A DNA stretch of 64,000 nt, from positions 1 through 64,000 of the forward strand of contig NIVC01003568.1 in NCBI GenBank assembly GCA_002269645.1. The letters are read 5' to 3'. Below, in pieces: positions 4,226 to 58,440 of this stretch. Position 1 is the first letter of the stretch; each line of letters starts with the position of its first letter. The notes beneath the pieces were generated by a model. It worked only from the letters and a program-made list of their open reading frames with translations. It was not told where the DNA came from and made no database searches. Source of the DNA: Macrostomum lignano. Taxonomy: Eukaryota. Both the position numbers and the translations under genes were made by a program.

Positions 4226-5010
4226 TATTAGCAGTAGCAGTAGCAGTAGCATTAGCATTTGCATTAGCATTAGCAGTAGCATTAGCAGTAGCATTAGCAT
4301 TAGCATTAGCTTTAGCATTAGCAGTAGCAGTAGCATTAGCAGTAGCTTAGCTTTAGCAGTAGCAGTAGCATTAGCAGTAGCATTAGCATTAGCAGTAGCA
4401 GTAGCATTAGCAGTAGCATTAGCATCTGCATTAGCAGTAGCAGTAGCAGTAGCATTAGCATTAGCAGTAGCAGTAGCATTAGCATCTGCATTAGCAGTAG
4501 CAGTAGCAGTAGCATTAGCATTTGCATTAGCATTAGCATTAGCAGTAGCATTAGCATTAGCATTAGCATCTGCATTAGCATTTGCAGTAGCAGTAGCAGT
4601 AGCATTAGCATTAGCATTAGCATTAGCATTTGCATTTGCATTAGCATTTGCATTAGCATTAGCATTAGCATCTGCATTAGCATTTGCATTTGCATTTGCA
4701 TTTGCATTTGCATTTGCATTTGCATTTGCATTTGCATTTGCATTTGCATTTGCATTTGCATTAGCATTAGCATTAGCATTAGCATTAGCATTAGCATTAG
4801 CAGTAGCACTAGCATTAGCATTAGCATTAGCATTTGCATTTGCATTTGCATTTGCATTAGCATTAGCATTAGCATTAGCATTAGCACTAGCACTAGCATT
4901 AGCATTAGCAGTAGCATTAGCATTAGCATTAGCATTAGCAGTAGCAGTAGCAGTAGCAGTAGCATTAGCAGTAGCATTAGCATTAGCATTAGCAGTAGCA
5001 GTAGTTAGTA
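4226..5010. repeat. Hexamer satellite (TTAGCA/GTAGCA/TTTGCA)n
   Basis: 6-bp periodicity with blocks of variant units. Confidence 0.95.
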
Positions 5011-9772: not shown

Positions 9773-10506
<734 letters not shown>

Positions 10507-21300: not shown

Positions 21301-22207
21301 CGGCTCAGGAAGCGGCTGAGCAGGCAGCAGCTGCCGAGGCCGAGGAGCGGAGGTGTGCGGAGGAGGAGCGCCTGCGACAGGTTCGTGCCCGATCTCCCTC
21401 GTCAGCTCCTGCTTACCCCCCCCCCCTCTAGCCTGTAAGCTGAATCTTCAGTGAGGCCTGTCGGTACATTCTGGGTAATTCACATTTTAGGAGGCCCAGG
21501 CCGCCAAGGAGGCTCGCGAACGAGAAGAAGCGGCCCTGGCCGAGAAGCTGGCAGCCGAGGAGGCCGCTCGCCAGGAGCGGCGCCGTCGCCTCGAGGCGAT
21601 CATGCACCGCGTCAAGCCGGCCGCCTCCGCAGCCGCCGCCTTCGCCGCAGCCGGAGCGGCCAACGCCGCTGCTTCATCGGCAGCAGAGGCAGCGGCTGCG
21701 GCTGCGGCAGCGACCACCTCGCCAACCGGTGACGCATCGATGACCGTGTCGATGCCACCGACGGTGCTGGAAGCCGAGCTGAAGCAGCAGTCTCCGCAGT
21801 CGCCAGCCGACCTGGCCGTTCTGGCCGACCGTCTCAAAGGCACAAAAGCGGCGGAGATCCTCGCCAGACGCAGCGGCAGCCAGAACACGCTGCTGACTCC
21901 GTCGACGTCTCTCGCTGACGTGTCCAATTCCTCCACCAATGTGTCTGACGACTCCACCGATGCCAAAGTGAAGTCGCGGCTGGCGGCTGTGCGGGCCCGC
22001 CTGAAGCCTGCGGCGCCGGTCGGAGAGGCGGCTCCAGCTGACTCATCGTCCGCTTCCACGCCTCCGCCGCCGCCTCTGCTGCCTTCGTCCGTGACGACTA
22101 CGACAACGACGGAGACGACAACATCGGCGGCGAAGGACGAGGACGCGGAGAGCGGCGTCAGCTCGCCCCAGTCGGCACTCGGCGAGGGTGACCTGCTAGC
22201 GGTGTGA
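12335..22207 (+). CDS. MAP7: MAP7/ensconsin-family microtubule-associated protein (5' end not located)
   Basis: Exons 12335-12829, 20037-20252, 20591-20835, 20913-21380 and 21491-22207 join in phase at GT-AG sites. It has an N-terminal charged coiled coil (LRLARQLQAEEHRRRVR...EERKKRLEQADRERRVALLRRL), a FAFGSCTPR motif, a Ser/Pro-rich linker and a C-terminal MAP7 helix (AAKEAKRRFEEQRRLHREK...ERRRRLEAIMHRVK). The family call is from remembered motifs; further exons may exist. Confidence 0.8.
12855..13690. repeat. G-rich ~19-21-bp minisatellite at the start of the MAP7-like intron
   Basis: Core ggggcggatgag; units grade from ...tttggag variants to ggggcggatgagatccttttc. Confidence 0.92.
14214..15327. 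repeat. 14-bp satellite (TTGGATCAGATAGA)n
   Basis: About 80 near-identical copies. Confidence 0.97.
16113..16299. repeat. 16-bp minisatellite (caccaaggggcgccag)
   Basis: About 11 copies, three of them with a ctttag variant. Confidence 0.92.
17860..18740 (-). promoter_or_regulatory. Antisense promoter module: TATA, CCAAT and clustered bZIP sites, followed by a putative non-coding first exon
   Basis: Minus-strand TATAAAAG 18198-18191; CCAAT 18252-18248; TGACGTCA 18265-18272; TGAGTCA at 18276, 18689, 18700; TTGCGCAA at 18329, 18388, 18671; gtaagt donor near 17860. Confidence 0.5.
19400..19652 (-). mobile_element. tRNA-derived SINE family A (CORE-like), copy 1
   Basis: Head gggttgtagccctcgtggttggagcg...gggggttcgattct (A/B boxes), then tccttgagtaagacacttaac...ctgtaaaatggg, similar to the MIR-type CORE. 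Shared with copies at 22.5 and 33.4 kb. Confidence 0.85.
19664..19860 (+). mobile_element. tRNA-derived SINE family B, diverged copy
   Basis: B-box-like agttcgattcc; shares acattaatttggggct and agggccgctgtacacc with copies at 33.8, 41.4 and 55.4 kb. Confidence 0.65.
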
Positions 22208-22454
22208 ATTTGCCAGCTGCAAACACTACTGTTCTCACAGTCAGTAGGATATGCTGGATATTCTATTCAGAATTAATTGGCTGCAATCGATTTTTAATGA
22301 GTTCATCCCGCATCCATTGACTATCAGAGTTGATTTGTATTCAAAAGAAGAAAACCTGTCTGTTTTCCCACTGAAAAAAATTTCCCGCACACAATGACCT
22401 TTATCGGAGACTCGGCGACTTTGGAAAGACTTTGGCAATAATATTAATTAAATA

Positions 22455-22713
22455 ATTAATTACACCTGCCCTAATGGGTTGCGCGGACTGCTGAAGGCTG
22501 CGTACGGCTGTTCAGTCCAAGGACTGGGGGGTCGCCACACACAGCCTCAATTACCCCAGCTAATGCTGGCACCCATTTTACAGCAAGGTGAACTGAAGCA
22601 ATGCAGAGTTAAGTGTCTTGCTCAAAGGACACAGATTGTTTAGAGTGGGCCGAGAATCGAACCCCTGACCTTTCAGTCGTGAGGCTGACGCTCTAACCAC
22701 TAGGCTACAACCC
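22455..22713 (-). mobile_element. SINE family A, copy 2
   Basis: Same head, CORE-like block (tcctttgagcaagacacttaac...tgtaaaatgggtgcc) and caggtgtaat tail as copy 1. Confidence 0.85.
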
Positions 22714-23919
22714 CCTCTGACAATAATAGCAGCATGGCAACAGTCAACTTCTGAGAAACTTTGATAAAAATTAGTCGCTGAAAACATATCCTGCGTGTTT
22801 ATAACTGCAATGATTGGTGTTTGAGTTCCTCATCTACATAATCACCTGACCGCTGTCAGAAAAAGCATTCCAAAGGCTGCATCAGCCACTCGCTTACTCG
22901 GTTCATTGTGTACTTTATGCATCTTTTCAGTGCACTTGCCAGACACTCGGCACTTCTTTTTGAAACCCTCCAGCCCCCCCCCCCGATTTTTAGCCGCAGA
23001 CAGAAAAAGCTGAGACATTTGTGAAAATTTGAGTCTGAAGTTTTTCTTTCTGCAATGTGAAATTGTGCAAGGGGTAGCCGCTTCCTGCTAATTATGGATT
23101 TTTATAGTTAATATCCGACTTGGTTGCCTCGAATTCAACACCTCGCCAGCTGACCGAACTTGCCGCGGAGCTCCCCTATGCGGCCGTATATTGGTCGCGG
23201 GTTCGACTCCTGCTAAGAGAGCGTTCCTCGGGCTCGGCCAGATTCGGCCAGTCCGGGTGTCCGACGCTGTCCAGGAGTGCCTCGGCCTCGGTTCGGGCGG
23301 CGGCGGGTGGTTGAAGGTTGAAGCTTATAGGCAATGAAAGCATGCAAATGGTAAACTAGCGAAGCATGCACCCCTTCGCAATGTGTTTCTTATTTAAGCT
23401 AGCTCTCTTCGGTTTGCTGATCAAGTTTTGTTTCTTTTTTTCTGCTTTTTTTCTTGCCCTTTTTTCTGCCGATTAAAAAATTCGAAAGTTTTTTGCGCTT
23501 TTTTCTCTGCTATGCTTTTTGCTGCAAAGAGATGGACTTCGCTGACGCGGTCAAAGCATGTCCTGCTCTCCTCCACGCCTCTCTCAAAAGAAGTGACAGT
23601 TGCTTTCGATCATTAACTGCGCAAGTGCGGCACTCTCAAGGCATCCTGTTTTACGGAGTTGTATCACATCCCACTTAGAGTAGTCCCCCCTCTGCACATG
23701 AGACTTTTCAGCACCAGCTTTAATCCCTGGCACATATCACTTGAAAAATAAATACAAACAAATGCACTCTCTGTAATTCAATTGGACTGAACCGATCGCT
23801 TGCATTGACGGCATAGAATTCTGTCGCTTTGCTTTGACTCTCGTCTTTTTAATGAAGAAAACTAGTAAAATCCACTGTGGGAAATTTCTTTCTCTTGTTT
23901 TCTTTTCTCCTCCCTTCTC

Positions 23920-24275
23920 TTGTCTTGTCCTGTCTTGTGACTTGTCCTGTCTTGTGACTTGTCCTGTCTTGTCTTGTCCTGTCTTGTGACTTGTCCTGTC
24001 TTGTCTTGTCCTGTCTTGTCTTGTCCTGTCTTGTGACTTGTCCTGTCTTGTCTTGTCCTGACTTGTCTTGTCCTGTCTTGTGACTTGTCCTGTCTTGTGA
24101 CTTGTCCTGTCTTGTCTTGTCCTGTCTTGTCTTGTCCTGTCTTGTGACTTGTCCTGTCTTGTCTTGTCCTGTCTTGTGACTTGTCCTGTCTTGTCTTGTC
24201 CTGTCTTGTGACTTGTCCTGTCTTGTCTTGTCCTGTCTTGTCTTGTCCTGTCTTGTGACTTGTCCTGTCTTGTCC
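23920..24275. repeat. Pentamer-based satellite (CTTGT/CCTGT/GTGACTTGT)
   Basis: Direct degenerate 5-bp periodicity. Confidence 0.9.
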
Positions 24276-24855
24276 CTTTTTGTCTTATCCTGCTTGTCTT
24301 TTCCACTTTCTATTCACTTTCGCTCTTCATGTCTATTTACAGTAAGATAAGTTATTTATTGATTCGTTGTTTTTGTTAAGCGTATATTCTGCTGAACGCT
24401 GCTTTGCTCTCCGCAAACCATTTTCGTGAAAGTTTCTTGTTAAAGTTTAAAGCTTAACCACCAGCTAGAAAAAGCATAAGAAGGGATTAGAGCAGAGCAA
24501 AATGCCCAACTGGTCCTGAGAGCGTGCTGGCCAGTTTTTTTGCCCGAAAGTTACAAATCAAGATTGTCACCTTCTGAGCCTACTCAGCGGATAATTTACC
24601 TGCAGTTGCAGCCAGCTAGCTTTACACAGTTCAATCTTAGTATCGAAATCTAATCGCTCTGATCTGCGCTGAGCAGAGAGCAGCTCAGAACTCGAATGCG
24701 TCACCTGCGCGCGGGTCTCTCGCCTTGGCCTTATCAGTAGGTGCTCGGTTCTATTCTCGTATTTATTACTGAGCTGCGCCTGCCCGGCAGGTCAGCACCA
24801 AGCAGGTAAGAGAGAGAGAGAGGCTCCAAAGTAGAGGCTGAAAGCCAGAGAGGGG

Positions 24856-30858
<6,003 letters not shown>

Positions 30859-31828
30859 ACCGGAATTACTGCCGCTAGTAGTATGCATGGGATGCACACT
30901 TTTGAGAGACCGGCTTGCAGTGAGTAGCGGGATGCACTCCAAGGTGTCCGGCCAACACAATAAGCTGCGTAATTCTGCACTAAGTTTTGTATTGTAATTC
31001 CACTGGCTCTAAAAAAAGCAAAGTGGTCCTTGAGTAGATTTCACTTGGAACGGAAACCTATAGAAGAAGCTCTTCAATTTTCCAATTTTCCTGATTATCT
31101 CCCTTATTATGCTATTCGACTGACACTTCTAAACAATGTAATGTTTACATGAGGGGAAATGTAATGCCCCCCCCCCAAGTTTCTGCATAAGTAGTGTGTA
31201 TAGTCCATTAATTTTAGCCTTCTGTTGTTGTTAGCAGTCTTGCTCACTTGAGCACTGAACAGTAAGTATATGTAGAAATTACAGTGTAGAAACTGATTTT
31301 CCCAAATATATATTTTCTTTTATCTTCAGGACGAAGAAAGAGTTCTTTAAAAAGTGTGACGACCTCGAGTTCTTAGTCTCCCTTGATCAGGAATGTTCAA
31401 TGCAAATAAAGCGACAGAAGTTCCATAGACGACCATGGATTACAAAATGTGAGGATTTGTCAAATATAAAAAGCGTTGCCTTTGGCTGCCCAACAGCCGG
31501 CAGTGCTGACTCCCAATTCAGATCAATATATTTTCCGGGGCGCGTACGGCCCCGCTCTCTCCCTCGCTGCTCCAGCAATGCAAGCAAGTTTGTTAACTGT
31601 TCCGCCGAAAAGTAAATGGCATACAAAACTAACAAAAATGGCGACTGTGGGGTTTTGAACACAAAATGCCGAACAATTGAATAAGGGAAGAGTGAGGATT
31701 GGTGGGATAAATGCGAGGTTACAGAATGGAGAATATTTGCTACAACCGCGAGTTGCCGACGGCACAAAGTCGGAGGCAGTCGGGGAGATGAGAAAGCATT
31801 CTCCAAAGCCGAGAGCTTGCAGACGTGT

Positions 31829-34816
31829 TTAGGCCTCGGAGGCGTTTCTCTCAGTCTGAGCTAACGATGTTGACGTGTTGATGGTTCCGGTCTGCAGTGG
31901 TGGCGGCTCTGCCTGCTCAATTGAGTCAAAAAAATCGCCCTCTTTAAGGTAGTCCTGCTGCACAATGTCTGCCACGTAGCAGCGAGCTTTCGGATCTCTG
32001 ATGAGCAGCTGGTTGAGCACCGGGTGCACATTGGCAATGTTGGGCATTCGGCAGGCCGGGCAGGTGGCGAATATCCAGTTGGACTGGTTGGAACCGCGGA
32101 ACTTCGCCCACAGGTGCTCCCGGTCGCTTAATAGCATCTCGCACATGAAGAACCCCAGCAGCCAGCTGTCGATTCTGCATTGAGCAGTGTGGGGAGGCAG
32201 GGTAGCTCAAGGGTAACAAGTTGGGCTCTCAGGCTCAAGCTCACGCCGATGGGGCTAGCGCTCAAACAGTGTGTACATGCCTGATGATGGAAGCTGCACA
32301 CACGGTGCACTATTTTGGATTCAATAAGTTTGGGCATAAATTTTTTGTCTACCAGCAGGTTGCGGTCAGAACTAACTGACTATTAGATGAGGGGTAAGTG
32401 AGCAGCATCTCAATTAGATTCTGCATCGGATGAGGGGGTAATTGAGCAGCATCTCAATTAGATTCTGCATCGGATGAGGGAGGCGGTGAGCAGCATCTCA
32501 ATTAGATTCTGCATCGGATGAGGGGGTAAGTGAGCAGCATCTCAATTAGATTCTGCATCGGATGAGGGAGGCGGTGAGCAGCATCTCAATTAGATTCTGC
32601 ATCGGATGAGGGAGGCGGTGAGCAGCATCTCAATTAGATTCTGCATCGGATGAGGGGGTAATTGAGCAGCATCTCAATTAGATTCTGCATCAGATGAGGG
32701 AGATGGTGAGCAGCATCTCAATTAGATTCTGCATCGGATGAGGGAGGTGGTGAGCAGCATCTCAATTAGATTCTGCATCGGATGAGGGAGGCGGTGAGCA
32801 GCATCTCAATTAGATTCTGCATTGGATCAGGAAGGTGGTGAGCAGCATCTCAATTAGATTCTGCATCGGATGAGGGAGGCGGTGAGCAGCATCTCAATTA
32901 GATTCTGCATTGGATCAGGAAGGTGGTGAGCAGCATCTCTTACAAATTCTGTTTCAGTTAGAAAGGAGTAAAAAGGCCCACTAAAACCGCATCTTAAAAT
33001 GACTCACTTATAATCGTTGACAAAGTTCCCCATCTGTCTGGTCTCGGGTGGATAGTACTGCATCTGAGTCACCCTCGCATTGGGCTTGTACTCTGCCATT
33101 GTGGCGGGCGCTTTCACGGCCAAGCCGAAGTCAATGAGGGCCGGAGTGCCATTATGCATAATTAGAACATTGTCGCACTTGATGTCGCGGTGACAAATTT
33201 GAATACTGTGCAGCTTCACCAAGGCCGATGTGATGCACGCGAAGTAATAGCGGATGCTGGACTCCGGCAGGGTGCCGAGTTCCTGCTTTAGAGTCTTCAG
33301 AGAGAGTGGAGAAGAACAATTATGATTTATGTGATAGTCAGCTGGTAATAATCATTTATTACACCTACACTCGGGCAGATGAGCAACCGACAGCTCAGCC
33401 GCAGCTATTGCGCGGCGCATCTGAAGGCTGCGTACGGCTGTTCAGTGCAAGGACTGGGGGGTCGCCACACACAGCCTCAATTGCCCCAGCTAATGCTGGC
33501 ACCCATTTTACAGCTGGGTGAGCTGAAGCAATGCATAGTGAAGTGTCTTGCTCAAGGACACAATTTTTTCCAAGTGGGATCAGGAATCGAACCCCCGACC
33601 TTCAGGTCGTGAGTCCGACGCTCTAACCACTAGGCTACAAACACTAGTGAACCGGTAGCAACTCAATAAGTTTAATTCACAATAACCTAAAACCTCTGAC
33701 TCTTAAAATGATGATAATATGTAGTAAAATTAATATATAATAATATAATAATAGGAGGGCTGCGGGCAGCCTGGCGCAATGCCTTCGGCGACATGGTCCC
33801 ACAACCAGCGCTGACGGCAGTTCTGCCCATTTCGCCAATACTGTACGCAGGCGCGCACCCATGCACCCAGGGTGCACAGCGGCCCTGACTTTCTAATCCT
33901 CAGGCATGTACACTCTGTGTGCCTCATGAGGATTTGGATCGTACAGCCCCTGACCAACGCGCACAAGTTCCAAATCAATGTTTGTTTTATTTCTTACCTT
34001 TAGCGAGGCAAACTTCGCTTTCGGCATGATGGTAATAAAAAATCGTCGAGTGAGGTAGTTGACGAGAATTGTGCCAACAAACTGACTGGCTGACTGGCCT
34101 TTCAAGTGTAAAATGGTTCGCTGCACGTGACGCTCCACTTTTTTCTCTTCTCGTCTGTGATAGCACACCTTCATTGCCAGGCTGGTGGAGTGACCTTGGC
34201 GGCGGACGAACATCACAACGCCTTGACCTGAATGGACGAGTTAGCAAGATTTATACTCTGTTGCGTTGCTACTTTTTACTTCCTTCTACATGTATACTTA
34301 TGATCCCATTTGACCCGCCTATTGTATAGTTTAATTTGATTTTAATGATAGCAGTTGCTTGTACAGCGCAGGTGTCAGGATATGGGTTAATCTGTTCTTC
34401 AAGGTTGCTCAAAAACAACCTCTCAACAGTTGTAAACAAAGAGTCTCACCCCCGATAAACAGCCTCCTATCCTTTCGCTGCAGCACAAACTCGGACAGAT
34501 CCCAGGGCCGCTCGCCAGTTTTGGAATACATCTTGTCCGTGACGATGCACTCGAAAAGATCTTCCACTGAGACCTCCCTGGCGATGCGTAGAAAGTCTGG
34601 ACAGTCGATCTTGTTCCAATCCAGAGTCTCGTGAAGGCAGTTATGCCTCGCTTGAGGCGTCGGCCAGAGTCGAATTCGAACCACCGGACAACCAAAACGA
34701 TCAGCGGCTGACTCGGCTGAGACTAGACTTGGAGAACTGCAGCTCTTTTCCTCGATGCTCAGCGACATGGGATTGCAGTCCTCAGAGGCGCGCAGGCCCT
34801 TCCGAGTCATTGACAT
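31829..34816 (-). CDS. Ser/Thr protein kinase, divergent AGC/PKG-like, catalytic motifs intact (~409 aa)
   Basis: Exons 34816-34450, 34227-33998, 33294-33008 and 32174-31829 are in phase (1230 nt). Motifs: Gly-loop IGGGQGVV, LAMK, RYYFACITSALVKLH, HRDIKCDN, DFG, YYPPE, IDSWLLG, DPKAR. Confidence 0.88.
32375..32940. repeat. 44-bp minisatellite in kinase intron 3
   Basis: Unit gatgagggaggcggtgagcagcatctcaattagattctgcatcg, about 13 copies. Confidence 0.95.
33350..33640 (-). mobile_element. SINE family A, copy 3 (kinase intron 2)
   Basis: Head ttgtagcctagtggttagagcgtcggactcacgacctgaaggtcgggggttcgattcc; CORE-like tccttgagcaagacact...gctgtaaaatggg. Confidence 0.85.
33745..33960 (-). mobile_element. 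SINE family B, 5'-degraded copy (kinase intron 2)
   Basis: Reverse complement contains gaggcacacagagtgtacatgcctgaggattagaaagtcagggccgctgtgcacc, matching the other B copies. Confidence 0.65.
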
Positions 34817-35150
34817 GGGACAGATTTTTTATATGATTAACTGCCTTTCGAACTACATTGGAATATAGCCAACTCAAATAGTGGCTTGCATAGCCACCAA
34901 AGCTGAAATTGTGGCACAAAGCCGAAAGGCACACACAAGGGCGAAACAATTTTATTCAGCTATTGGTGAAATGAACGAACTAAAAATTCTACTACTTACC
35001 TACGTTAGGCGAATGCCTGCATTGTCTATGGACAAATCCTTAAAGCTCGTTATGTCAACCAAGTATTGGCTGATCGTGTTGCTACCGTCTTAACTTTGAC
35101 TTTTTACTTTCACTCTGTCAATGAGACACCATAAATTATAAGCAAGAGAG

Positions 35151-37465
35151 ATGCAAACAACTTCATTATCATATCACCGTGAAAACACGCCTGGTGAAAA
35201 CACGACCGACTCGAAGAAAAATGTACAAAAAAAGAAGACAGGAGCAAAGAAAGGCAATAAAGCCAACGACTTGAAAGCAAACGCTGATGTCCCCAAAGAG
35301 GAAGAAGCGAACGCCGGTCAGAGTGCCCCCAAAGAAAGCCAAATAATTCTATTCGACGGTGATTTCGATCTCAGCCACTTGACTCGAGATTTCTGGCTCG
35401 ACCAAAGGCGCTGCGTGCAAAATGGAAGCAGGTAAGTTGGCATTCTGTTCCAACCAACTCAACACCTAAACATCTGATCCATTGAAATAGCACAGTGTAT
35501 ACTAGGGAAAAATTATTCTATCTTGTTAACGAGCCTACCATATTCATAATGCTTTAGTATTTTACTGAACGTCTGCCTTATCTTATTCCAAATCAAAGAC
35601 ACATCCGCTGCGACAGCCACTGCGTCCGGTACATGTGCACTAGTCGATCATTACGCGACTGGCAAGAAGAGGAGATCAAAACAATATTGGAGAACTTTAA
35701 ACGGATTATCAAAGCTCAGAGAGACTTGGCCTCGTTGACGCCGTTTGTGCAGAAAGTTTTAGCAGCTAAGGTATACCGCCACGATCTGCTGGTCATTACG
35801 CCGCTGCCCAGTAACATGTACTTAAGCGATCTCAAGAAGTTAATGGTGCATCTCACGCACAGCACAGTTCGCTACTACGCTGCCTGCATCCTGCTGGCCT
35901 TGGAATTTTTGCACCACAGGAGAATATATCACGGAAATCTGTCGCTAACAAGCATAGCGTTGGATCACTACGGCAGGCCGCAGGTTACTGATCTAGACAC
36001 GTTGCTGTTCGAAACCATTGGCGAAATGTCGTACCAGCTTGATGTATTGCGGTACGCAGCTTTATTAGGCGTTTTACACTGCGACAATTTGCGACACTTT
36101 AGTGTCTCCCATATGCGCTCTACATCCCTGGATGATAGACGCAGAGACGTCTTCAGTGGAGTTTGTCCTAAGTGCCGACTAACAGCTGAGTGCATGGAAC
36201 CGAAGCTATGCAATTGCAACGACTTCGGTTCGCTAGTTCGTCACATCAAAGGCAAAGTTATTAATAAGGATTCGATGCGCCGCATCCTGGATACTCTTCA
36301 GTGCACATGGATTGAAGCTGATCTTCGCTACTCATGGAGTCGTATTCCAAAGGTAGAGGAAGCTTTAAAAGTTGCTATTAATTATGCGAGCGTAAATTTC
36401 TGCACGCTCTTTTAGTAGTCCATGAACTGTTTTTTGAGATGATAACAGATCAGTCATTTTCCTCCGCAGAAACAGAGTGCGCTGGGTTCTTCGACAGGCC
36501 CAAGTCAGTTACAGTATTCAGACGATGCCTACGATGACATTGACGAGGATTTCGACGAAGATATCGATTGGCCAATGCGACAATCGCATATATCTCTGTG
36601 CACCTCCAGCACCCCACAAAACACGGAAACGACGGGAACTAAGAGCGACTCCAGCAACCCCAGCATCGTGATCGATTTGACCAGCAAGAAAAAGCACCAA
36701 AATATGCAGCGCCAAAAAGAGTTGCAAAGCCAAGGGTCTCAACTACTCTCCGAGCCGTCCCAGTCGGTGAAACTTTCCAACTTAAATTGCATGGGAGTGT
36801 CGTACAAATCAGTTCTGGGAAAGTCTTCATCCGATGCTGCGTTGGAGCCGTCTCAGAATAAAAATGCTGAACCAAAACTGGTGTCACGTTCAGCATCAGT
36901 GCCAGAACTCCCTAAAGTACATCGTTCGAAGCGTCAGACTTCTATTGAATCGCTGAATGCAACGCCGAAAGTTTTCCCTTCCACGAAGAATTCATCATTC
37001 GATCAAAAATCGAAGCCTTTGCCACCTGAGTCATCACCAACGATGTCCGCGCAACAACAATGGGTCGACTTGAGCGATGAGGAATCCCGGGTAGAGACGA
37101 ATACCAGCACCGACAAGAAGCCGCAAAGCAGCAGTAGCAGCACTCTATGGCAAGGCCTTTTTACAGCAGCCAGCAACAGCTCTGTGTCTGTATCTGAGCA
37201 TACGGGGTGCGTATTCGATGCTGGCCACAATCAATCGGCTAGCAATTTATCCTCTGCAAAGGAGCAAAACCAAAAAAAGCCACCGACAGCACCGCCAGCG
37301 AACCCAACGCAGTTGCCTGCATCCAGTATGGACCAAGGCAAGCCAGCGACTATCAATGCCAAGTCGGATCACCACCAGTTCAAGTTTTCCGATTATCAGC
37401 AGATGATGCGACATGTTTATTTTGCTGTAGGATTTTTTTCGCTCATAAAACTTTGGAATAAATAG
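35151..37465 (+). CDS. Pseudokinase (AGC/PKG-like fold remnant) with long acidic, Ser/Gln-rich C-terminal tail (~676 aa)
   Basis: Exons 35151-35431, 35599-36352 and 36470-37465 are in phase (2031 nt). STVRYYAACILLALEFLHHRRIYHGNLSLTSIALDHYGRPQVTDLD aligns to kinase subdomains VIa-VII with HRD>HGN and DFG>DLD; no Gly-loop or VAIK is recognisable. The 3' end is uncertain. Confidence 0.75.
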
Positions 37466-38961
37466 CGGGTTTAAAATGGTTTCTTGTATGGGATCAGGAA
37501 ATTTAATTAAAAGGGATGAGGTGAGAGCGAATTCAAGTTTTGCAAATCTATGGAAGTTGAGAGAGGCACCAAATCAGCAACTGGGGGGGGGGGCAGAATC
37601 AGTCGTAGCTCAGCAATTAACACGGCTAAATTTCGTGCTAAAGTACACCCAGGTAAGGTAAGATACCCATGTGCACAAAAATTGGACTGGGGCTCGCGAA
37701 ACTTTCGCCAACGAGGGCCAATCCCAAGGCACAGAAAGAGCACATTTCAGTTGACGAGAAATTCGACCGCTTTACACCCTGTGCGAGCGTGTGTCTGTGT
37801 ACGTATTCTGCGTGCTCGGAGGTCAAATCAGCCAACCTTGATTTGTGGCACTGTCCTAAGCACTATCCCTGTCCCTACCACCGTCTAGGGCATCAACTGG
37901 ATCACTCTGGAAGCGGCCCAGCCTCCGGAAGGATTCTGGTTCGCGACTGGCCTCATCATGCAGGACTATGCACAGGATGCGGCTCCGCTACGGACTGGCG
38001 ACAACGCTGGTGGGGAAACCGACCAATTGGCTGGGTCGTACTTTACTAGCAGGTCGCGCCTTCTGTACAACATGTTCGGCTGATCGCGTCTTAATGTCTG
38101 ATGAATCATTGCTGGCTCATCGGTTTGGTATGGTCAGCGCTGTGTAGCTGCTCTATCGTTTATTTATGCAAGAAACTACCGATATTACCAAACCGTACTA
38201 TGTGAGTACTAAAAGTACAACTCTAGAATAATCATAGTAATTCATAAGCCCGAAACTTTTGTTAAAAGATACGAGTACTTGTACTATTTTAAAAAGTTTA
38301 AGATCAACCTAGGCTGCTTTCTAATAATTTTCAGGAGTTTGCATTATTATTTGCATTATTAGCTCGTATTTAAGGATTATTTTGTATGTCTGTTGGTTTG
38401 TAAAACGACACCCATTGCTGAAAAACTCTGCTTTGTACTAACCCGAACTTTTTTCTTAACGAATTCGACAGAATACAACGTGATAGGAATAAATATATTC
38501 AACTGATAATTTTTCACCTGCTTCTAGAGTAGCTCGTAATAGTCAAAATGGTTTCAATTCCAATTTCTCCTCGCGCGTAAGATACTTAATTGCACAGACC
38601 TGCTCATTTTTAACAGGATTCATATAATAAGTCCATGTGATCTAAAGCACTTCCTAAGAAACAGGTTGAAAATTTATCGTATGCTCTTCGTATCAAACAC
38701 GTGCCAATAAAAAATGATGCTGATTTTACGATTTATTTGTGGTCTTCATAAAATATGCTGACAGGTGTACAAACAAATTTATTTATTATACAATCGAGAA
38801 TCGGGTTTGATGTTTTTCAAAACATTCTATCACTCACTACTACAAGTAGGATCAGTGGGATCGTTGCTACTGCTAACAAGTTATGAGAGCAATATTTTAT
38901 AAGCGCGTGTTGCGTTTTACTGGGCAAAATGAAGGAAAATTTTGAGAAATTGAAAAATCAG

Positions 38962-39864
38962 TCAATCCAGCAACTTGCACAGCAGGTACTCGGTGAACTG
39001 TTGGCTGTCCGGGGCGCAGCCTCCAGACGATGCAGCCACTGTAAAACCGTGCGACAGGAACAGTCGCAGCACCTGAACAGAGTTGAGGTGACAGAAACCG
39101 TTCAGCGGAAATCGAATTACGTAATCCGAGTCAAGCTGATTCCAACTTGCGTTGCGCGGCTCCATCAGGGAGTCTGTAACATCCGGGAACAGCTCGGCTA
39201 GCAGGTGCTTCCGACCGGTGATCAGAATTCTCTCCTGTAGTTCCGGTCGCACGGTCAGCGTGACACACTCGCAGTCCCGCTGCTGCCGTTGCCAGTTCAG
39301 CTGCGACTGCTGCTGCGGCCTTGCACTTCGTCGCAATTGTTCCAACTGTCGTAGCATCCCAGACAGCTCGTAGAACTTCACTTCTTCAATGAGCTGATCA
39401 AGCTCCTGGAAGTCATGTGGCGTAGTCACCCGTCCTGAGCGCAGGTAATTAAGCACATGGCGAAACAACTCCCCGTCCCGGTCGATAAAATAGTGCTGCT
39501 TTAGCGTGTCCAGTACTATCGGTACCGATCCGTTGAACATTTTCCCCAGCCGCGATTCAGGATAGCGGGTCAGCGTCTCCAGCGAGGAGGTGTACGCCAC
39601 GCCGCCGACGTCGATGTGAACGGGCGCGGTATAGCGAGTTGGAGTGGCCGGACAAGGCACGCCGCTAATTTTGGACAGAAACAGCGAACTAATATGAGCC
39701 GAAGAGACGGTTACTGATGATGATGAGCACGGTAGCCCTGCTGCTAGACCTGAGGCCAGTCCGTTGCTTGGTGGGCTGCCGGATCGCATAGCCGCAGCAG
39801 CGGCGGCTGCCGCAGCCGTTAGCAAAAATTCAGCTGGCTCCTTCTTCACCGGGCCGTTATCCAT
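38962..39864 (-). CDS. KCTD15: BTB/POZ protein KCTD1/KCTD15 (Tiwaz-like), single coding exon, 300 aa
   Basis: SGVPCPATPTRYTAPVHIDVGG..YTSSLETLTRYPESRLGKMFNGSVPIVLDTLKQHYFIDRDG and C-terminal YVIRFPLNGFCHLNSVQVL...QQFTEYLL are hallmark KCTD1/15 sequences. Confidence 0.92.
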   Translation of the reverse strand: MDNGPVKKEPAEFLLTAAAAAAAAAMRSGSPPSNGLASGLAAGLPCSSSSVTVSSAHISSLFLSKISGVPCPATPTRYTAPVHIDVGGVAYTSSLETLTRYPESRLGKMFNGSVPIVLDTLKQHYFIDRDGELFRHVLNYLRSGRVTTPHDFQELDQLIEEVKFYELSGMLRQLEQLRRSARPQQQSQLNWQRQQRDCECVTLTVRPELQERILITGRKHLLAELFPDVTDSLMEPRNASWNQLDSDYVIRFPLNGFCHLNSVQVLRLFLSHGFTVAASSGGCAPDSQQFTEYLLCKLLD

Positions 39865-41411
39865 CGATGTTGTTTTGAAGAAGCAAATTTTCCAACAACA
39901 CCGGACGAAGACGCAGACAGGACGATAGAGATAACTCTAGTCGAGCTTGGAAAATGTCAAAGAGTGCCGGAAGAGACCAGAGGGGAGCCTTGGATGGTGC
40001 CCTCGGGATGTCGAGAGATGGAGGGATTTTATAGAAACGGACGGCACTGCAGGGAGGGGCCTCGCAGCCTGCAGCCTTAGAACTGAAGCGAGGCCTCCGG
40101 CTACAACTCTTGAATTGACGCGTCCCACCTCCTCTCCTCCGCTGCCTCCTCCCCAACCACCTCATTCCCATTCCCCTCGCTTCTCCGAATCGCCTCAAGG
40201 TTCCCGTGCGCTTTCACTTAGCCGGAGCTGGGGGGAAGGGGTGCAAAGAGGAATGGGAGGCCTAAGCAACCTCCCAAACCCGGGCCATGGGGTGCCCCCG
40301 GGGCCCTACCCAGAGCGGCTCTCCCAATCCAGCCAGTGTTCTATATATAGGAGGAGGGGGAGACGATGGGTGAGCCCGGGATTGCCCGAGGGGCCACATT
40401 ATCATGATAAAATTAAGGCGCCCCCGGGCCAGGATCCTCCATCTCGCGCACTCGCCTCTACATCCATCTCTCCGATTTCTCCCATGTATGCAGCGCCTTG
40501 CATTGTGCGCGCTCGGTGCAGAGGCCGAGATGATTAAAGCGCCCAGCCACCACACAATCCAACTCGCCCCTTTTCATATTCCCCCTCTGTGCTTGTGCGG
40601 CAAGACGGCCTGAGGCGGCCAACATAAAAAAGAGTGGAGCAGAGAGAGAGAGAGGAGGCGAAGGCAGCCTGAGGGCTCCATCGGGAAGGCGGCGAGCTAG
40701 GAAGAGGAGATCCATGCAGGCGCAGAGATAGGGGAAAAAAGAGAACGGTCATACGAAGTAGCCTCAGGACCGAAGCGAGTTCCTCTGACTCGGCTGGAAC
40801 TGCAATTGGGGAAGTTCCCTCAGCTACCATCAGCTTTGGATTGGGCCCTCCTGTACGATAGAAATCTAAATGAAGCTGTAAATGCAACTGTGTGTCATGT
40901 AAAATCGCTCATAAATTATTGTCGATGCTTGCTATTCAATAATCGTCGTCACCAACCCTATGCAGAAAAGTGAAGTGTTCAGCAACTGAGATATTACACA
41001 AATATTGCAGAGTGCTCCTACATGTAAAGCAATCCGACGACGTCTATAGACGTCTATGACAAATATGTTGTTTTACATTACACCCACGTTCAGCCGACAT
41101 ATGGGTGGGCCATAGACAAATGTTATGCTCTCGAGTCTCAGCTACCACATACCCCTTCTTGGGAAAGAAACTGCCATCAACTGTCAACAGGCGATAACAT
41201 TGCGATGTTTTTGCAAGCGCCTGTCTCTATAAACAAATGAGTTACAATATGAATATTTTCCTATAGCTGATTTCGGTCAGGTATTCGTTCGACCATTCAA
41301 ATAGCTAGTTTTTTTTCATTTGCAATGCACAAGCTTAATGCAATTTTACATACGCTCTCGTACAGTGGCTCGCTATTCGTACAATAGTACAATTCGTACA
41401 ATGCATGTATC

Positions 41412-41630
41412 TGACGGCTGTAGCCTAGTGCTCTGATGTGCCAGCGGCCCAGGCTCGATTCCCAGTGCAGTCGCATTAATTTGGGGCTAAATTTTAATCT
41501 CGGCTTGGGTCTGCTCGAGCAATATTGACGCCCTTGAGGGCAAACACCCGAGAGGCACAGCTTGAAGTGTACATGCCTACATAAACTTAAGGCCGTTGCA
41601 CACCCCTGTGTAAGTGTGTACCTGTAAGAT
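41412..41630 (+). mobile_element. SINE family B copy
   Basis: gacggctgtagcctagtg...ggcccaggctcgattcccagtgcagtcgcattaatttggggct; colinear with the reverse complement of 55.3-55.6 kb. Confidence 0.75.
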
Positions 41631-43952
41631 TGTCTTCGTATTATAGAGACCGACGAGCAATGGATTTTAGTCGAATCGAGTACTTGACCGAGTTTCAGTG
41701 CTTCGAGGGTCGAATTTTTGTTGAGTAGTCGAGTGTTAACTAAAAAATTCTAAATTTCAGTTTACAAAAAGGTCTTCACTGCCGCTAATAGTGGCTCCAA
41801 GCCACGAATTTTGGGCTGCCAAGTCCGCCACCGCCACACCAGCAACCGCCGATTCCAGCACCTCACCTGTTCAGCGTTTTTGGCTGGGTGCCACCGCCTG
41901 CTCGCCTGCACACAGGCCAGGCCATGTCTTCACGCAGTCCTCCGCAACCTCTTTGACGGTCTCCTTGGTAGCCAAACTGGGCCTACGTCTAGGTCGCGAG
42001 AGCGGCCCTGGCAACTGACAGCAAATCTGATCTCGCCACGCAACAGTGCTTCTGGCGTCGCCGTGTCTTCATCAATACCACGTCTTCGGCGAGCCCACAC
42101 CCCTGGCCTGGCCGCCTCTGCTTTTGCTGCACCATCGGCTGAATTCCCGGTCGTGAGATCGATCGACGATGTTGCTCAAAGTGCGCCTGAGTGCACAAAA
42201 CCTTTAAAAAAAGAAAAGCTAGCTCCTTGGCAAAATGGTTCGGTTAAATAATTGCCCATGTAAAGTCTAATACATGTACATGTACATGCGCGATACATCG
42301 ATGTACTTTACAAAGAAATTACACAAACACTGAAAAGTCTAGACTAGAAGCTTTAATTAATTTTTGTCAGTGACTTATTCCACAAAACCTTTGTGCCACA
42401 CACCACTTTTTTGAAACTTTCCTACTCCAGTGTCTGTAGATCGATGTGTGACATAGTCGTTTAAGTCGAGTACTTTTGTACAAGGACCACTAGGAACACA
42501 ATTCGTTATAGTTTACATGTAGTAGTCCTTGCTTTTGTTATAGGGCTTATAGATGATGTCTCCAAAGCTCAGAGAATTACTGCATGAACTTTATCAGTTT
42601 TTCATTCAACCATAAAGCGCCAATAATACACTCAAGTTTATTATTGTGGCCTAAAAACCACGCAGCATGCGGCAAAGGACGAAGTCTTGATCTTAAGTCA
42701 GTGAAACCTGTATGGCAATTTGTCTACTTAACGTCGCCTTTAAGGCCTACTTAAGTTGCCTTGGCTGTTGCGCGATCTCTGCAATTAGAAATTTAACTAT
42801 GACGGTTAAAATCACTTTCAAATACAATATTCAAATGACTTGCGAAAGATTTAATTTACTGCTCTAAAGATTCCGTACAATATATTTTCAAAATCTGTTC
42901 CGTACTAACAAAATATTTTTTAAATAATAATAAAGCCAGACAAAGCCTAAAACTAAAAGATAAAATATATTTGTGCTTTAAAGCAGCTAGATCAATTTAT
43001 TGAATAAAAACAGTAGAACCGCGTCATACTTAATGCCGTTCCTAGAAAAGGTCGCTTCATTGATGAATTTGAACCGCATACGCAACTACGCCTATTAATT
43101 AACTCGTACTTAATTAACTTCGTTTTTTGTCCAGTTACAGTTGTATCACGGATTTAAATAGGTTTGTTTAGCATATACAGAAAGCATGATATTTTTAGAT
43201 TTGCTGAGAAGGATACGAAATTGTTTTATTCCAACTTATTCGTTGTTTTCAACTGGTATGGTAGAATGTAATACCAAAATATTTAACATGTACACCAAAA
43301 GCCCAAAATCATCAACATGTACGCCAAATTTCTTGAATATACCCCAGAAATTTATGATATGCATGCTTTCTTTCTAACTATGGTTTAAGAATACTTTTTT
43401 TCAATGCAAAAAGAGTTATTAACTAATTAAGTTCCTAGGGTTGGCACTCAAAAATATTTTTGATACTATATTTATATTGTAGTTGGGATGGGGGCTTAAG
43501 TTAAAATGAATGAAGCTAGATAGAAACCTACCTAATATTAGCTGCATAAAGAAGACTAGATTGCAGACAATTTAGGAGGCTTGTTTTGAAGGAGAAGTGT
43601 AAGAGAAAATAGATTAAACAAAAAGGGAAGAGGGGAATATAGAAAGAGAAAAAATAGGCAAAAAGCAGTCAAGTTGATAGACATAAGGTGCCATATACTG
43701 ATATAGAGGGTAGAAATGTAGGATGAATATATAGAATATTCAAAATTGAATTAATTAAACCAAGTATTTGGTTTGAAATAGAACCAGAAAGTTAACAATC
43801 AATCCAAATAATGAAATATCCAATAGTCACTTTAATATGTGGCAAAGATTTAAAGCAAGTCAGGAGTTAAATATTGGTATTGTATTGTGACTTATAAATG
43901 AAGGGAAAGCATTAGGCCTAGGGATAAATAAAAATTATAAGACTAAAGACTA

Positions 43953-44913
43953 AAAAGTTTTGGACTTCTTCAAGTTTATGTTGATAAAATAGTTTCAATT
44001 TGGATAGGATCATAATTTTGTCTCTATAGGGGTTTTTGATGGTGCTGATTTCAAATTTGAGCTCCATTTTTAGGTAGCTTTAACCCAATTATATGTAGCT
44101 TAAAACCAACCACCGGGGCATGGGGAATGGGGGGTTTTAGGGTGGGGAGATTCTTCATGGGGATTGATTTTATCAACATAAACTTGAATAGAGGCATAGA
44201 GACCTATTCAAGATTGTGTTGATAAATTCCAATTCTAATAGGGGGGGGGGTTGAAACAAGTTGGAATTTATTTGACAATGAATCTCTGTTTAATTATATC
44301 AACATAAACTTGAATCAACATAACTTTATCGAAATGAATTTGCTTACCGAAATTAAGTGCTGTTACTGCCTTAATACAATTAGAATTAGTAATCTAGCCT
44401 TGTACAGTAGTTGGTTTTGAGGTGCGAAATACAAGTGCGAGTTTTGAACGTTGCTTTGGCTGGGTGCAGTGAAAGTGCAAGTGCAAAGATTGAGCGGATT
44501 GTGACGTGGCAGTTTTTAAAAAAAGGCACACAGTGACGTGGCACTGTCAATGCATTATAACTAAATTGAAAAACTATAATCCGCAAACAAAAAAAACATT
44601 TGCATATTAATTTGTAGATATTAATATTCATCTTTAATTGGCCTAATGAAGTTCTAGCACATGTGCCATAAAATTAAAAGTCAAGTGGATACACTTTCAA
44701 AAATGTATTTGTAGAAACTTTTTTCACCGAACCTCATTAAGAGAATAGGGAATCAAGTAAATCGTCATTGCATCAACCGTACAGGTAACTTTCTACACTT
44801 TTTTTGCATTTTTGTAATTTTGGGTGCCCCATAAGTCTCCACCGCAAGTTTCAGAAAAATTGAAAAATCGGAAGTATTTTATCAACATAAACTTGAAGAA
44901 GTCCAAAGTTTTT
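43953..44913. mobile_element. Non-autonomous DNA transposon-like element (inverted ends, repeated internal motifs)
   Basis: ttttggacttcttcaagtttatgttgataaaata (~43958-43991) is inverted at ~44875-44907. The tatcaacataaacttgaa motif recurs at ~44171 and ~44297. True ends are uncertain. Confidence 0.6.
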
Positions 44914-50701: not shown

Positions 50702-56950
<6,249 letters not shown>

Positions 56951-57349: not shown

Positions 57350-58440
57350 GTATGTGCACCCTCTGCTCCAGCCCCCAGTGTACATCCTCTGCTCCAGCCC
57401 CCAGTGTACATCCTCTGCTCCAGCCCCCAGTGTACATCCTCTGCTCCAGCCCCCAGTGTACATCCTCTGCTCCAGCCCCCAGTGTACATCCTCTGCTCCA
57501 GCCCCCAGTGTACATCCTCTGCTCCAGCCCCAGTGTACATCCTCTGCTCCAGCCCCCAGTGTACATCCTCTACTCCAGCCCCCAGTGTACATCCTCTGCT
57601 CCAGCCCCCAGTGTACATCCTCTGCTCCAGACCCCAGTGTACATCCTCTGCTCCGGCCCCCAGTGTACATCCTCTGCTCCGGCCCCCAGTGTACATCCTC
57701 TGCTCCAGCCCCCAGTGTACATCCTCTGCTCCGGCCCCCAGTGTACATCCTCTGCTCCAGCCCCCAGTGTACATCCTCTGCTCCAGCCCCCAGTGTACAT
57801 CCTCTGCTCCAGCCCCCAGTGTACATCCTCTGCTCCAGCCCCCAGTGTACATCCTCTGCTCCAGCCCCCAGTGTACATCCTCTGCTCCAGCCCCCAGTGT
57901 ACATCCTCTGCTCCAGCCCCCAGTGTACATCCTCTGCTCCAGCCCCCAGTGTACATCCTCTGCTCCAGCCCCCAGTGTACATCCTCTGCTCCAGCCCCCA
58001 GTGTACATCCTCTGCTCCAGCCCCCAGTGTACATCCTCTGCTCCAGCCCCCAGTGTACATCCTCTGCTCCAGCCCCCAGTGTACATCCTCTGCTCCAGCC
58101 CCAGTGTACATCCTCTGCTCCAGCCCCCAGTGTACATCCTCTGCTCCAGCCCCCAGTGTACATCCTCTGCTCCAGACCCCAGTGTACATCCTCTGCTCCA
58201 GACCCCAGTGTACATCCTCTGCTCTAGACCCCAGTGTACATCCTGTGCTCCAGGCTCAATGTGCATCCTGTGCTCCAGGCTCAATGTACACCCTCTGCCC
58301 CAGTTCTCAATGTACACCCTCTGCCCCAGTTCTCAATGTACACCCTCTGCCCCAGTTCTCAATGTGCATCCTCTGCTCCAGACCCCAGTGTACACCATCT
58401 GCTCCAGCCCCCAGTGTACATCCTCTACTCCAGCCCCAAA
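57350..58440. repeat. 26-bp minisatellite
   Basis: Unit cccagtgtacatcctctgctccagcc, about 40 copies, degenerating at the right end. Confidence 0.96.

What the first reader, a model, noticed from the sequence alone, without database searches (positions are those of the whole stretch)
31829..37465. Head-to-head kinase / pseudokinase pair of apparent common origin
Seen: an intact Ser/Thr kinase (-) and a pseudokinase (+) start only 334 bp apart (ATGs at 34816 and 35151). They share an unusual helix-E signature (SSIRYYFACITSALVKLH vs STVRYYAACILLALEFLH) and a DLS motif before the N-lobe (WDLSEF vs FDLSHL). One keeps HRD/DFG; the other has HGN/DLD plus a long disordered tail. Knowledge: RFYxAC followed by LDHxG is characteristic of cGMP-dependent kinase (PKG), yet neither gene has cyclic-nucleotide-binding domains, and pseudokinases often regulate an active partner (STRAD-LKB1, JAK JH2-JH1). 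Inference: a lineage-specific inverted duplication gave a co-regulated enzyme/regulator module on a bidirectional promoter. This is the best candidate for an undescribed system in the window.
Basis: partly seen in the sequence, partly recalled or inferred. Interest (0 to 1): 0.75.

Follow-up and report, generated by a model that had tools for sequence, protein, structure and literature searches.

The report
Flatworm kinase and pseudokinase neighbours
Two back-to-back genes of the flatworm Macrostomum lignano encode a highly diverged AGC-like protein kinase and a catalytically dead but conserved relative; both are real, genus-restricted genes, but nothing yet shows that they work together.

Summary
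The observed sequence features are real. The window is Macrostomum lignano DNA. The minus gene is BOX15_Mlig019684 (409 aa, 4 exons). The plus gene is BOX15_Mlig006990 (728 aa, 4 exons). Their ATGs lie 334 bp apart.

Corrections:
- The plus gene ends at 38083, not 37465.
- The "tail" is a fast-evolving ~320-aa linker that leads to a conserved 64-aa C-terminal exon.

The kinase keeps the beta3 Lys, HRD, Asn and DFG, but has no acidic residue at the alphaC-Glu position. The partner lacks the Gly-loop, Lys, HRD-Asp, Asn and the activation segment, so it is a true pseudokinase. It is transcript-supported and under purifying selection (dN/dS about 0.13).

Both families appear only in Macrostomum-type data among 1.8-5.8 billion proteins. 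Both resemble AGC kinases most (PKG, PKN, PKC). Neither has cNMP domains or a detectable AGC tail. The "unusual" helix-E signature is essentially AGC consensus.

Local duplication is plausible. The neighbour scores about 10 bits above any solved kinase, and the two share a hinge Pro, RYYxACI and CxxC. It is unproven: 17 unrelated kinases score higher, intron positions differ, and the older pseudokinase paralogue (three loci) has no kinase neighbour. Functional coupling is untested.

The parts
31829..34816 (-). Kinase gene BOX15_Mlig019684 (409 aa). CDS exons are 34816..34450, 34227..33998, 33294..33008 and 32174..31829. The Pkinase domain is aa 121-371, roughly 34456..31946.
   Evidence: Translation is 100% identical to P0001. 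Pfam PF00069 scores 93.8 bits, E=1.5e-26. Exon borders match the transcript homologue L004.
34817..35150 (.). 334-bp region between the two start codons, 39% G+C. It is a candidate shared (bidirectional) promoter plus both 5' UTRs. The transcription start sites are unknown.
   Evidence: Coordinates. It is identical in the duplicate locus L002. No promoter test was possible, because the scan uses a bacterial consensus and is irrelevant here.
35151..38083 (+). Pseudokinase gene BOX15_Mlig006990 (728 aa). CDS exons are 35151..35431, 35599..36352, 36470..37426 and 37889..38083.
   Evidence: Translation equals P0033. The gene spans L003 6734..9666, which corresponds to window 38083..35151.
35331..36352 (+). 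Pseudokinase domain (aa 61-345, interrupted by intron 1 at 35432..35598). It lacks the Gly-loop. The beta3 Lys is replaced by Met, HRD by HGN, the catalytic-loop Asn by Ser, and DFG by DLD. About 40 aa of the activation segment and APE are missing. It carries a Cys-rich insert, CPKCRLTAECMEPKLCNC.
   Evidence: Alignments. Pfam gives only 18.1 bits, below the 31.7 cut-off. The AF2 model has pLDDT 70-87 for residues ~45-195, and every top Foldseek hit is a protein kinase. dN/dS is 0.13 against the paralogue.
36470..37426 (+). Exon 3, a ~320-aa low-complexity, probably disordered linker rich in S, T, K, Q and P.
   Evidence: Only 29% identity to the paralogue, with pN=0.52 and pS saturated. No Pfam hit.
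37889..38083 (+). Exon 4, a conserved 64-aa C-terminal module: GINWITLEAAQPPEGFWF...GSYFTSRSRLLYNMFG.
   Evidence: 56% identity to the C-terminus of P0004, with SYFTSRSR invariant. dN/dS is 0.32. There is no Pfam, PDB or hhalign match.
32398..32939 (.). 44-bp minisatellite, 12.3 copies, inside kinase intron 3.
   Evidence: TRF result. Copy number differs between the two genomic copies.
33408..33640 (.). Dispersed, tRNA-like (SINE-like) repeat inside kinase intron 2.
   Evidence: A second copy at 89% identity lies elsewhere in L002. ARAGORN calls no tRNA.

Best explanation
These are two real, expressed, genus-restricted genes of Macrostomum lignano arranged head to head.

Mlig019684 encodes a strongly diverged AGC/PKG-like Ser/Thr kinase. 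It has a 100-aa N-terminal extension and no regulatory domains. It keeps the phosphotransfer residues (beta3 Lys, HRD, Asn, DFG) and probably has some activity.

Mlig006990 encodes an AGC-like pseudokinase that cannot catalyse phosphotransfer and probably does not bind nucleotide. Its core is joined by a rapidly evolving disordered linker to a short conserved C-terminal peptide.

The most likely history (inference) is an old local duplication of an AGC-like kinase in the Macrostomum lineage. One copy then lost catalysis and was kept under purifying selection as a non-catalytic scaffold or allosteric protein. It later gave rise to a dispersed paralogue (Mlig007152/Mlig010400).

Shown here: the gene structures, the motif states, the lineage restriction, the selective constraint and the adjacency. 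Inferred only: the common local origin, use of a shared promoter, and any partnership between the two proteins.
For: - Identity and gene models.
- Transcription: the Mlig_3_7 annotation is built from RNA-seq assemblies (PMC5730564), and a spliced transcript homologue of the kinase exists (P0002/L004).
- Kinase motifs.
- Pseudokinase motif losses.
- Kinase fold of the pseudokinase core.
- Constraint (Nei-Gojobori): omega is 0.13 for the pseudokinase domain, 0.32 for the C-terminal exon and 0.14 for the kinase. The linker is near saturation at both site classes.
- Lineage restriction: a profile search of 1.84 billion representatives returns only M. lignano proteins above 50 bits. The kinase has one homologue (64% identity) and one 44-bit hit in 5.8 billion proteins.
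- AGC affinity: the best solved matches are PKG1, MSK1 and Aurora A for the kinase, and PKC-theta, GRK2, PKN1/2 and Akt for the pseudokinase.
- Closer-than-average relation between the two: the pseudokinase profile scores the neighbour at 31.9-33.3 bits against 22.0 for the best of all solved kinases.
- No named hit above the neighbour comes from a flatworm.
- Both families share a hinge Pro, RYYxACI and a CxxC at the same C-lobe position.
- The kinase-family profile scores the adjacent pseudokinase at 32.8 bits, but the dispersed paralogue at only 22-24 bits.
Against: - Seventeen unrelated kinases outscore the neighbour against the pseudokinase profile, so sister status is not demonstrated. 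They include PKN-like fragments from frogs, a yeast PDK1, a plant phototropin-like protein and trichomonad kinases.
- The alignable stretch is only about 105 aa at 32% identity.
- Intron positions and phases in the kinase domain differ between the two genes.
- The dispersed pseudokinase paralogue has no kinase within 10 kb at the two loci scanned (L001, L005); at the third (L006) no gene is called upstream.
- No pseudokinase orthologue was found in the data set that yielded the kinase homologue.
- The kinase lacks an acidic residue at the alphaC-Glu position, so its activity is itself uncertain.
- The AF2 model was built on an alignment of kinases and is low-confidence for the C-lobe.
Confidence: 0.6

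Rival explanations
1. Chance neighbours. The two genes descend from different AGC-type kinases and were brought together by rearrangement. They share only family-level features, and their proximity has no functional meaning beyond ordinary head-to-head gene packing.
For: - Unrelated AGC kinases from frogs, fungi, plants and protists score higher than the neighbour against the pseudokinase profile.
- The shared helix-E motif is AGC consensus.
- Introns differ between the two genes.
- The pseudokinase paralogue is solitary.
- The kinase looks most like PKG, while the pseudokinase helix-E looks most like PKN/PKC.
Against: - Two kinase-fold genes as immediate neighbours is unlikely by chance, since kinases make up only a few percent of genes (general knowledge).
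- The neighbour scores about 10 bits above every solved kinase.
- No M. lignano protein is among the named higher-scoring hits.
- The two share rare residues: a hinge Pro and a CxxC.
- Both families are confined to the same genus.
Confidence: 0.27
2. Dedicated enzyme/regulator module. The pseudokinase binds and allosterically controls the neighbouring kinase. It would do so either by domain-domain contact or by docking its conserved C-terminal aromatic peptide (...LLYNMFG) into the kinase's N-lobe pocket. The kinase lacks a hydrophobic motif of its own. Both genes would be driven by one bidirectional promoter.
For: - The ATGs are 334 bp apart.
- The pseudokinase core and C-terminal peptide are under constraint while the linker is not, the pattern expected for two tethered binding elements.
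- The kinase ends about 45 aa after its domain with no FxxF.
- The pseudokinase tail reads, by eye, like an AGC tail (F..INW..LE...PPE ... YxxF at the C-terminus).
- The adjacent pseudokinase is more similar to the kinase than the dispersed one is.
Against: - There are no interaction, expression or start-site data. Four supplement and full-text searches for the gene ids found nothing.
- The AGC-tail reading fails every statistical test tried: hhalign probability 1%, no PF00433 hit, no AGC hit in PDB.
- The paralogous pseudokinase exists without an adjacent kinase.
Confidence: 0.1
3. The plus-strand gene is a decaying pseudogene or an annotation artefact rather than a functional pseudokinase.
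For: The Pfam score is below the curated cut-off (18.1 against 31.7 bits). All catalytic residues are lost. About half the protein is low-complexity.
Against: - The 728-codon spliced ORF is intact at both duplicate loci, with a single nucleotide difference in 2.2 kb of CDS.
- dN/dS is 0.13 across 251 codons against a paralogue with dS about 1.5.
- The four-exon structure and the C-terminal exon are conserved in the paralogue.
- The gene models derive from RNA-seq.
Confidence: 0.03

Closest known systems
cGMP-dependent protein kinase (PKG) catalytic domain and the wider AGC group (PKN, PKC, GRK, Akt, MSK)
   Same: PKG1 is the best solved-structure match of the kinase (61 bits). PKC-theta, GRK2, PKN1/2 and Akt are the best matches of the pseudokinase (about 20-22 bits). 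Both have the helix-E motif R[FY]YxAC...LH, and the pseudokinase has LDHxG before DFG as in PKG.
   Different: Neither has cNMP-binding domains or a detectable AGC C-terminal domain or hydrophobic motif. The scores are far below those expected for orthologues. In the kinase the activation-loop GT/APE is altered and the alphaC Glu is missing. Both families are restricted to one genus.
Pseudokinases that regulate an active partner (STRAD-LKB1, JAK JH2-JH1, KSR-RAF, HER3-HER2)
   Same: This is a catalytically dead kinase fold kept under purifying selection, with a related active-looking kinase available as a potential partner.
   Different: In the known cases the interaction is demonstrated, and the partners are either domains of one chain or unlinked genes. 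Here the only link is gene adjacency. The pseudokinase also lacks the whole activation segment and very probably the nucleotide site.
AGC-type kinases that lack their own hydrophobic motif and are activated in trans (PDK1 with PIF peptides, Aurora A with TPX2)
   Same: The kinase has no FxxF tail, and its second-best solved match is Aurora A. The neighbour ends in a conserved aromatic peptide on a long flexible linker.
   Different: This is purely an analogy from established knowledge of those kinases. No pocket residues or docking could be tested here, and sequence tests of the tail were negative.
Head-to-head (bidirectional) gene pairs of animal genomes
   Same: The start codons are divergent and 334 bp apart.
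   Different: Transcription start sites are unknown, and about 30-39% of M. lignano genes are SL trans-spliced (PMC5730564, PMC8629364). Co-regulation is therefore not established.

Membership tests
Eukaryotic protein kinase superfamily (Pfam PF00069) | Profile match above the curated threshold (kinase gene) | tested here: met
   93.8 bits against a cut-off of 31.7, covering aa 121-371.
Eukaryotic protein kinase superfamily (Pfam PF00069) | Profile match above the curated threshold (pseudokinase gene) | tested here: not met
   18.1 bits against a cut-off of 31.7, covering only aa 132-226. Fold-level support exists instead: the AF2 core has pLDDT 70-87 and all top Foldseek hits are kinases at probability 1.0. 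The model's alignment consisted of kinases, however.
Catalytically competent protein kinase | Gly-rich loop, beta3 Lys, alphaC Glu, HRD Asp, catalytic Asn, DFG Asp | tested here: inconclusive
   The kinase has GGQGVV (two of three Gly), LAMK, HRDIKCDN and DFG. At the alphaC-Glu position it has Gln158 or Thr160, and it has PPE for APE. Activity needs an assay.
Pseudokinase | Kinase fold lacking one or more of the VAIK Lys, HRD Asp and DFG Asp | tested here: met
   The Lys is replaced by Met (Ala in the paralogue), HRD by HGN, Asn by Ser. There is no Gly-loop, and the activation segment and APE are deleted. The DFG Asp is retained as DLD/DFD.
AGC kinase group | Catalytic domain most similar to AGC members | tested here: met
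   PKG1, MSK1, PKC, PKN, GRK and Akt head the solved-structure lists for both proteins.
AGC kinase group | AGC C-terminal tail with turn and hydrophobic motifs (PF00433) | tested here: not met
   No PF00433 hit at E<=10 for either tail. hhalign between the two tails gives probability 1%. There are no AGC hits in PDB. Only a by-eye resemblance remains.
cGMP-dependent protein kinase (PKG) | N-terminal tandem cyclic-nucleotide-binding domains | tested here: not met
   No cNMP_binding hit in either protein at E<=1.
Kinase-pseudokinase regulatory pair | Physical interaction and change of kinase activity by the pseudokinase | not testable with these tools
   No complex prediction or experimental data were available.
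Kinase-pseudokinase regulatory pair | Co-expression, or conserved linkage across species or paralogues | tested here: inconclusive
   Linkage is kept only in two ~99%-identical duplicates. The older paralogue is unlinked at three loci. No expression tables mentioning the gene ids were found.
Bidirectional promoter pair | Divergent transcription start sites less than 1 kb apart | tested here: inconclusive
   The ATGs are 334 bp apart. The start sites are not known.

The most novel reading that the evidence does not exclude
A Macrostomum-specific signalling module. A regulator-less AGC-like kinase with no hydrophobic motif of its own would be switched in trans by the pseudokinase encoded on the other side of a shared 334-bp promoter. 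The switch would use the dead kinase core and/or its tethered, conserved C-terminal aromatic peptide, which would mimic the missing AGC tail.
Probability: 0.1. Interest if true: 0.55.

Novelty: new member of a known kind. Interest (0 to 1): 0.3.

Why it matters
If the two proteins do act together, this would be a compact, genetically linked kinase/pseudokinase pair. It sits in a flatworm where transgenesis and RNAi work, so it could serve as a model for how a new pseudokinase regulator evolves from a duplicate.

As the evidence stands, its value is smaller:
- It adds two orphan, fast-evolving kinase-fold families to the flatworm kinome.
- It corrects the gene boundary of the pseudokinase.
- It shows that a sequence below Pfam's threshold is nevertheless a constrained kinase-fold protein.

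Tried and rejected
1. AF2 on a two-sequence alignment of the pseudokinase gave pLDDT 31 and was unusable. A 15-sequence alignment gave a usable core only.
2. I read the conserved C-terminal exon as a displaced AGC tail. It was not supported by hhalign, by a PDB profile search or by Pfam.
3. P0012, a Logan pseudokinase-like protein, looked like a possible missing link. It is closer to ordinary AGC kinases (90 bits) than to the pseudokinase (53 bits) and was rejected.
4. A search for a nucleotide-level inverted repeat between the two genes found only one 26-nt pair, both arms within the kinase gene's introns.
5. Shared intron positions as evidence of duplication: the positions and phases differ between the two genes.
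6. dN/dS between the two recent genomic copies had too few differences to use: 3 synonymous changes in the kinase and 1 change in the pseudokinase.
7. Expression data: gene ids were searched in full texts and in the supplements of three M. lignano papers, with no hits.
8. The 5' UTR of the kinase homologue transcript does not align to the intergenic region and carries no spliced leader.
9. Rfam and tRNA scans of the region found nothing.
10. I did not build a tree. The only outgroups at hand were selected for similarity to the pseudokinase, and both targets are long branches, so the result would not be interpretable.

Full report
**What is there.** The window is eukaryotic DNA with spliced genes. 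The minus-strand reading frames assemble into four exons (34816..34450, 34227..33998, 33294..33008, 32174..31829) with canonical GT-AG borders. The 409-aa product is 100% identical over its whole length to Macrostomum lignano BOX15_Mlig019684g1. Window 21829..44816 is base-for-base identical to contig NIVC01003568.1 of assembly GCA_002269645.1. An intronless 1550-nt transcript contig from SRA run SRR30276812 encodes a 64%-identical homologue (P0002). It aligns to the window in blocks that end at my exon borders, which independently supports the model.

The plus-strand gene starts at 35151, 334 bp from the other ATG. The deposited 728-aa protein (P0033, BOX15_Mlig006990g1/g2) instead splices at 37426 to a last exon at 37889..38083. 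My four-exon translation reproduces it exactly. The accession numbers of the two proteins are consecutive (PAA50768 and PAA50769), as expected for neighbours.

**The kinase.** Pfam Pkinase scores 93.8 bits. The best solved relatives are PKG1 (61 bits), Aurora A (59 bits) and MSK1 (58 bits).
- Present: LAMK (beta3 Lys), CHRDIKCDN (HRD, Lys, Asn), IDFGLA, DSWLLG.
- Departures: the Gly-loop reads IGGQGVV, APE is PPE, and the alphaC position that pairs with the Lys is Gln158 or Thr160 rather than Glu. This holds in the PKG1 alignment (Thr160); the multiple alignment likewise places no acidic residue there (Ile161).
- There are no cNMP-binding or other domains.
- The chain ends about 45 residues after the domain, with no FxxF motif.

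It is therefore an AGC-like, probably active but atypical kinase.

**The pseudokinase.** Pfam sees only helix E to DFG, at 18.1 bits, which is below the cut-off. Alignment with its paralogue, the kinase family and generic AGC kinases shows several losses.
- No Gly-loop.
- Met (Ala in the paralogue) in place of the beta3 Lys.
- HGN in place of HRD.
- Ser in place of the catalytic Asn.
- DLD (DFD in the paralogue) in place of DFG.
- About 40 residues of the activation segment, including APE, are missing.
- A Cys-rich insert, CPKCRLTAECMEPKLCNC, is present.

An AF2 model on a 15-sequence alignment reaches pLDDT 70-87 for the N-lobe, helix E, the catalytic loop and helix F. Foldseek returns only protein kinases for it. 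The C-lobe remainder is unreliable, and the alignment itself consisted of kinases.

Exon 3 encodes a ~320-aa low-complexity linker. Exon 4 encodes a 64-aa C-terminus that is 56% identical in the paralogue, with SYFTSRSR invariant.

**Is it alive?** The Mlig_3_7 annotation is derived from RNA-seq assemblies (PMC5730564), so both models rest on transcripts. Nei-Gojobori estimates against the paralogue P0004 (locus L001) are as follows.

| Region compared | pN | pS | omega |
|---|---|---|---|
| Pseudokinase domain, 251 codons | 0.177 | 0.652 | about 0.13 |
| C-terminal exon | 0.256 | 0.547 | 0.32 |
| Linker | 0.52 | 0.77 (saturated) | not computable |
| Kinase against P0002 | 0.259 | 0.716 | 0.14 |

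dS is close to saturation, so these omegas are rough, but neutrality is excluded for the core. The pattern fits two constrained elements joined by a free linker.

**Distribution.** A profile of the pseudokinase domain was searched with full HMMER sensitivity against 1.84 billion representatives. Only M. lignano proteins scored above 50 bits: P0003 to P0008, with P0007 and P0008 being frameshifted versions. The kinase, searched alone and as a two-sequence profile in 5.8 billion proteins, found only itself, P0002 and one 44-bit hit. Both families are thus orphan and genus-level, as far as public data go. No paper mentions the gene ids.

**Are the two genes each other's duplicates?**

Evidence for:
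- They are significantly similar: BLASTP E=3e-10, 32% identity over 88 aa.
- The pseudokinase profile scores the neighbour at 31.9 bits and P0002 at 33.3 bits. The best of all solved kinases scores 22.0.
- None of the named library hits above the neighbour is from a flatworm.
- Both families share a Pro at the hinge position that is usually Glu, RYYxACI, and a CxxC around the conserved C-lobe Pro (CPACRM and CPKCRL).
- The kinase-family profile scores the adjacent pseudokinase at 32.8 bits, but the dispersed paralogue at only 22-24 bits.
- Adjacent members of one superfamily usually arise by local duplication (general knowledge).

Evidence against:
- Seventeen unrelated kinases score 35.5-46.8 bits, above the neighbour. 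They include frog PKN-like fragments, a yeast PDK1, a plant phototropin-like protein and a trichomonad kinase.
- Intron positions and phases differ.
- No nucleotide-level inverted repeat between the two genes remains.

I put sister status at roughly even odds or a little better.

**Is the arrangement conserved?** The pair recurs on NIVC01000158.1 (L002). That copy is about 99% identical, a product of the recent genome duplication, so it is uninformative. Across it there are 3 synonymous differences in the kinase and 1 difference in the pseudokinase. The older pseudokinase paralogue is 68% identical in the domain, with dS about 1.5. It occurs at three loci (L001, L005, L006). No gene is called within 10 kb upstream at any of them. 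Six-frame HMM searches of L001 and L005 (L006 was not scanned) find no kinase-like exon on either side. A pseudokinase of this family can therefore exist without an adjacent kinase.

**Mechanism.** I commit to the following reading. Mlig019684 is a stand-alone AGC-like kinase. Mlig006990 is a non-catalytic kinase-fold protein that acts through binding, using its core and its C-terminal peptide. Most likely it was born from the same local ancestor.

Whether it regulates its neighbour is open. The attractive version has the conserved C-terminal aromatic peptide (...LLYNMFG) standing in for the hydrophobic motif that the kinase lacks, as PIF does for PDK1 or TPX2 for Aurora A. That version rests only on analogy and on a by-eye reading of the tail. 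hhalign, Pfam and a PDB profile search gave no support. I give it about 10%.

**Verdict.** This is a new, orphan member pair of a well-known kind (kinase plus pseudokinase paralogue), not a demonstrated system.

Noticed in passing
window 1-64000 (e.g. 1-946, 4227-5004, 9773-10506, 14214-15328, 25076-26185, 26501-27536, 51297-52398, 57353-58437): The window is densely packed with micro- and minisatellite arrays. There are at least 25 arrays of 0.2-1.1 kb, with periods from 4 to 120 bp. Many of the long mechanical ORFs are simply translations of these arrays.
   Followed up: partly
window 32398-32939: A 44-bp minisatellite (12.3 copies, 92% matches) lies in kinase intron 3. Its length differs between the two near-identical genomic copies, where the gene is 2988 bp and 3154 bp.
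   Followed up: partly
window 33408-33640: A dispersed repeat with a tRNA-like T-arm (SINE-like) lies in kinase intron 2. An 89%-identical copy lies about 10 kb away in the duplicate locus L002. ARAGORN calls no tRNA.
   Followed up: partly
window 46324-50223 (-): An uninterrupted 1300-aa pol-type ORF with reverse transcriptase, RNase H and integrase domains. This is an apparently intact LTR (Ty3/gypsy-like) retrotransposon.
   Followed up: partly
window 38965-39864 (-): A single-exon 300-aa gene with BTB_2 and KCTD1/15 C-terminal domains lies immediately downstream of the pseudokinase, tail to tail.
   Followed up: partly
window ~24856-30858 (+): A Na+/Ca2+ exchanger family gene (555 aa, PF01699) lies tail to tail with the kinase. 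Its introns hold several of the satellite arrays.
   Followed up: no
window 36160-36230 (+), pseudokinase aa 283-300: The Cys-rich insert CPKCRLTAECMEPKLCNC is fully conserved in the paralogue and could be a small metal-binding site. The kinase has CPACRM, and its homologue CSECHI, at the same place.
   Followed up: no
window 37415-37465 (+): Retention of intron 3 would give a 676-aa isoform ending in a hydrophobic VYFAVGFFSLIKLWNK. No annotation supports it.
   Followed up: partly
loci L001, L005, L006 (paralogue loci): All three copies of the dispersed pseudokinase paralogue have a gene-free 10 kb upstream. At two of them (L001, L005) a C2H2 zinc-finger gene lies about 6 kb downstream. This is a conserved context, different from that of the window.
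   Followed up: partly
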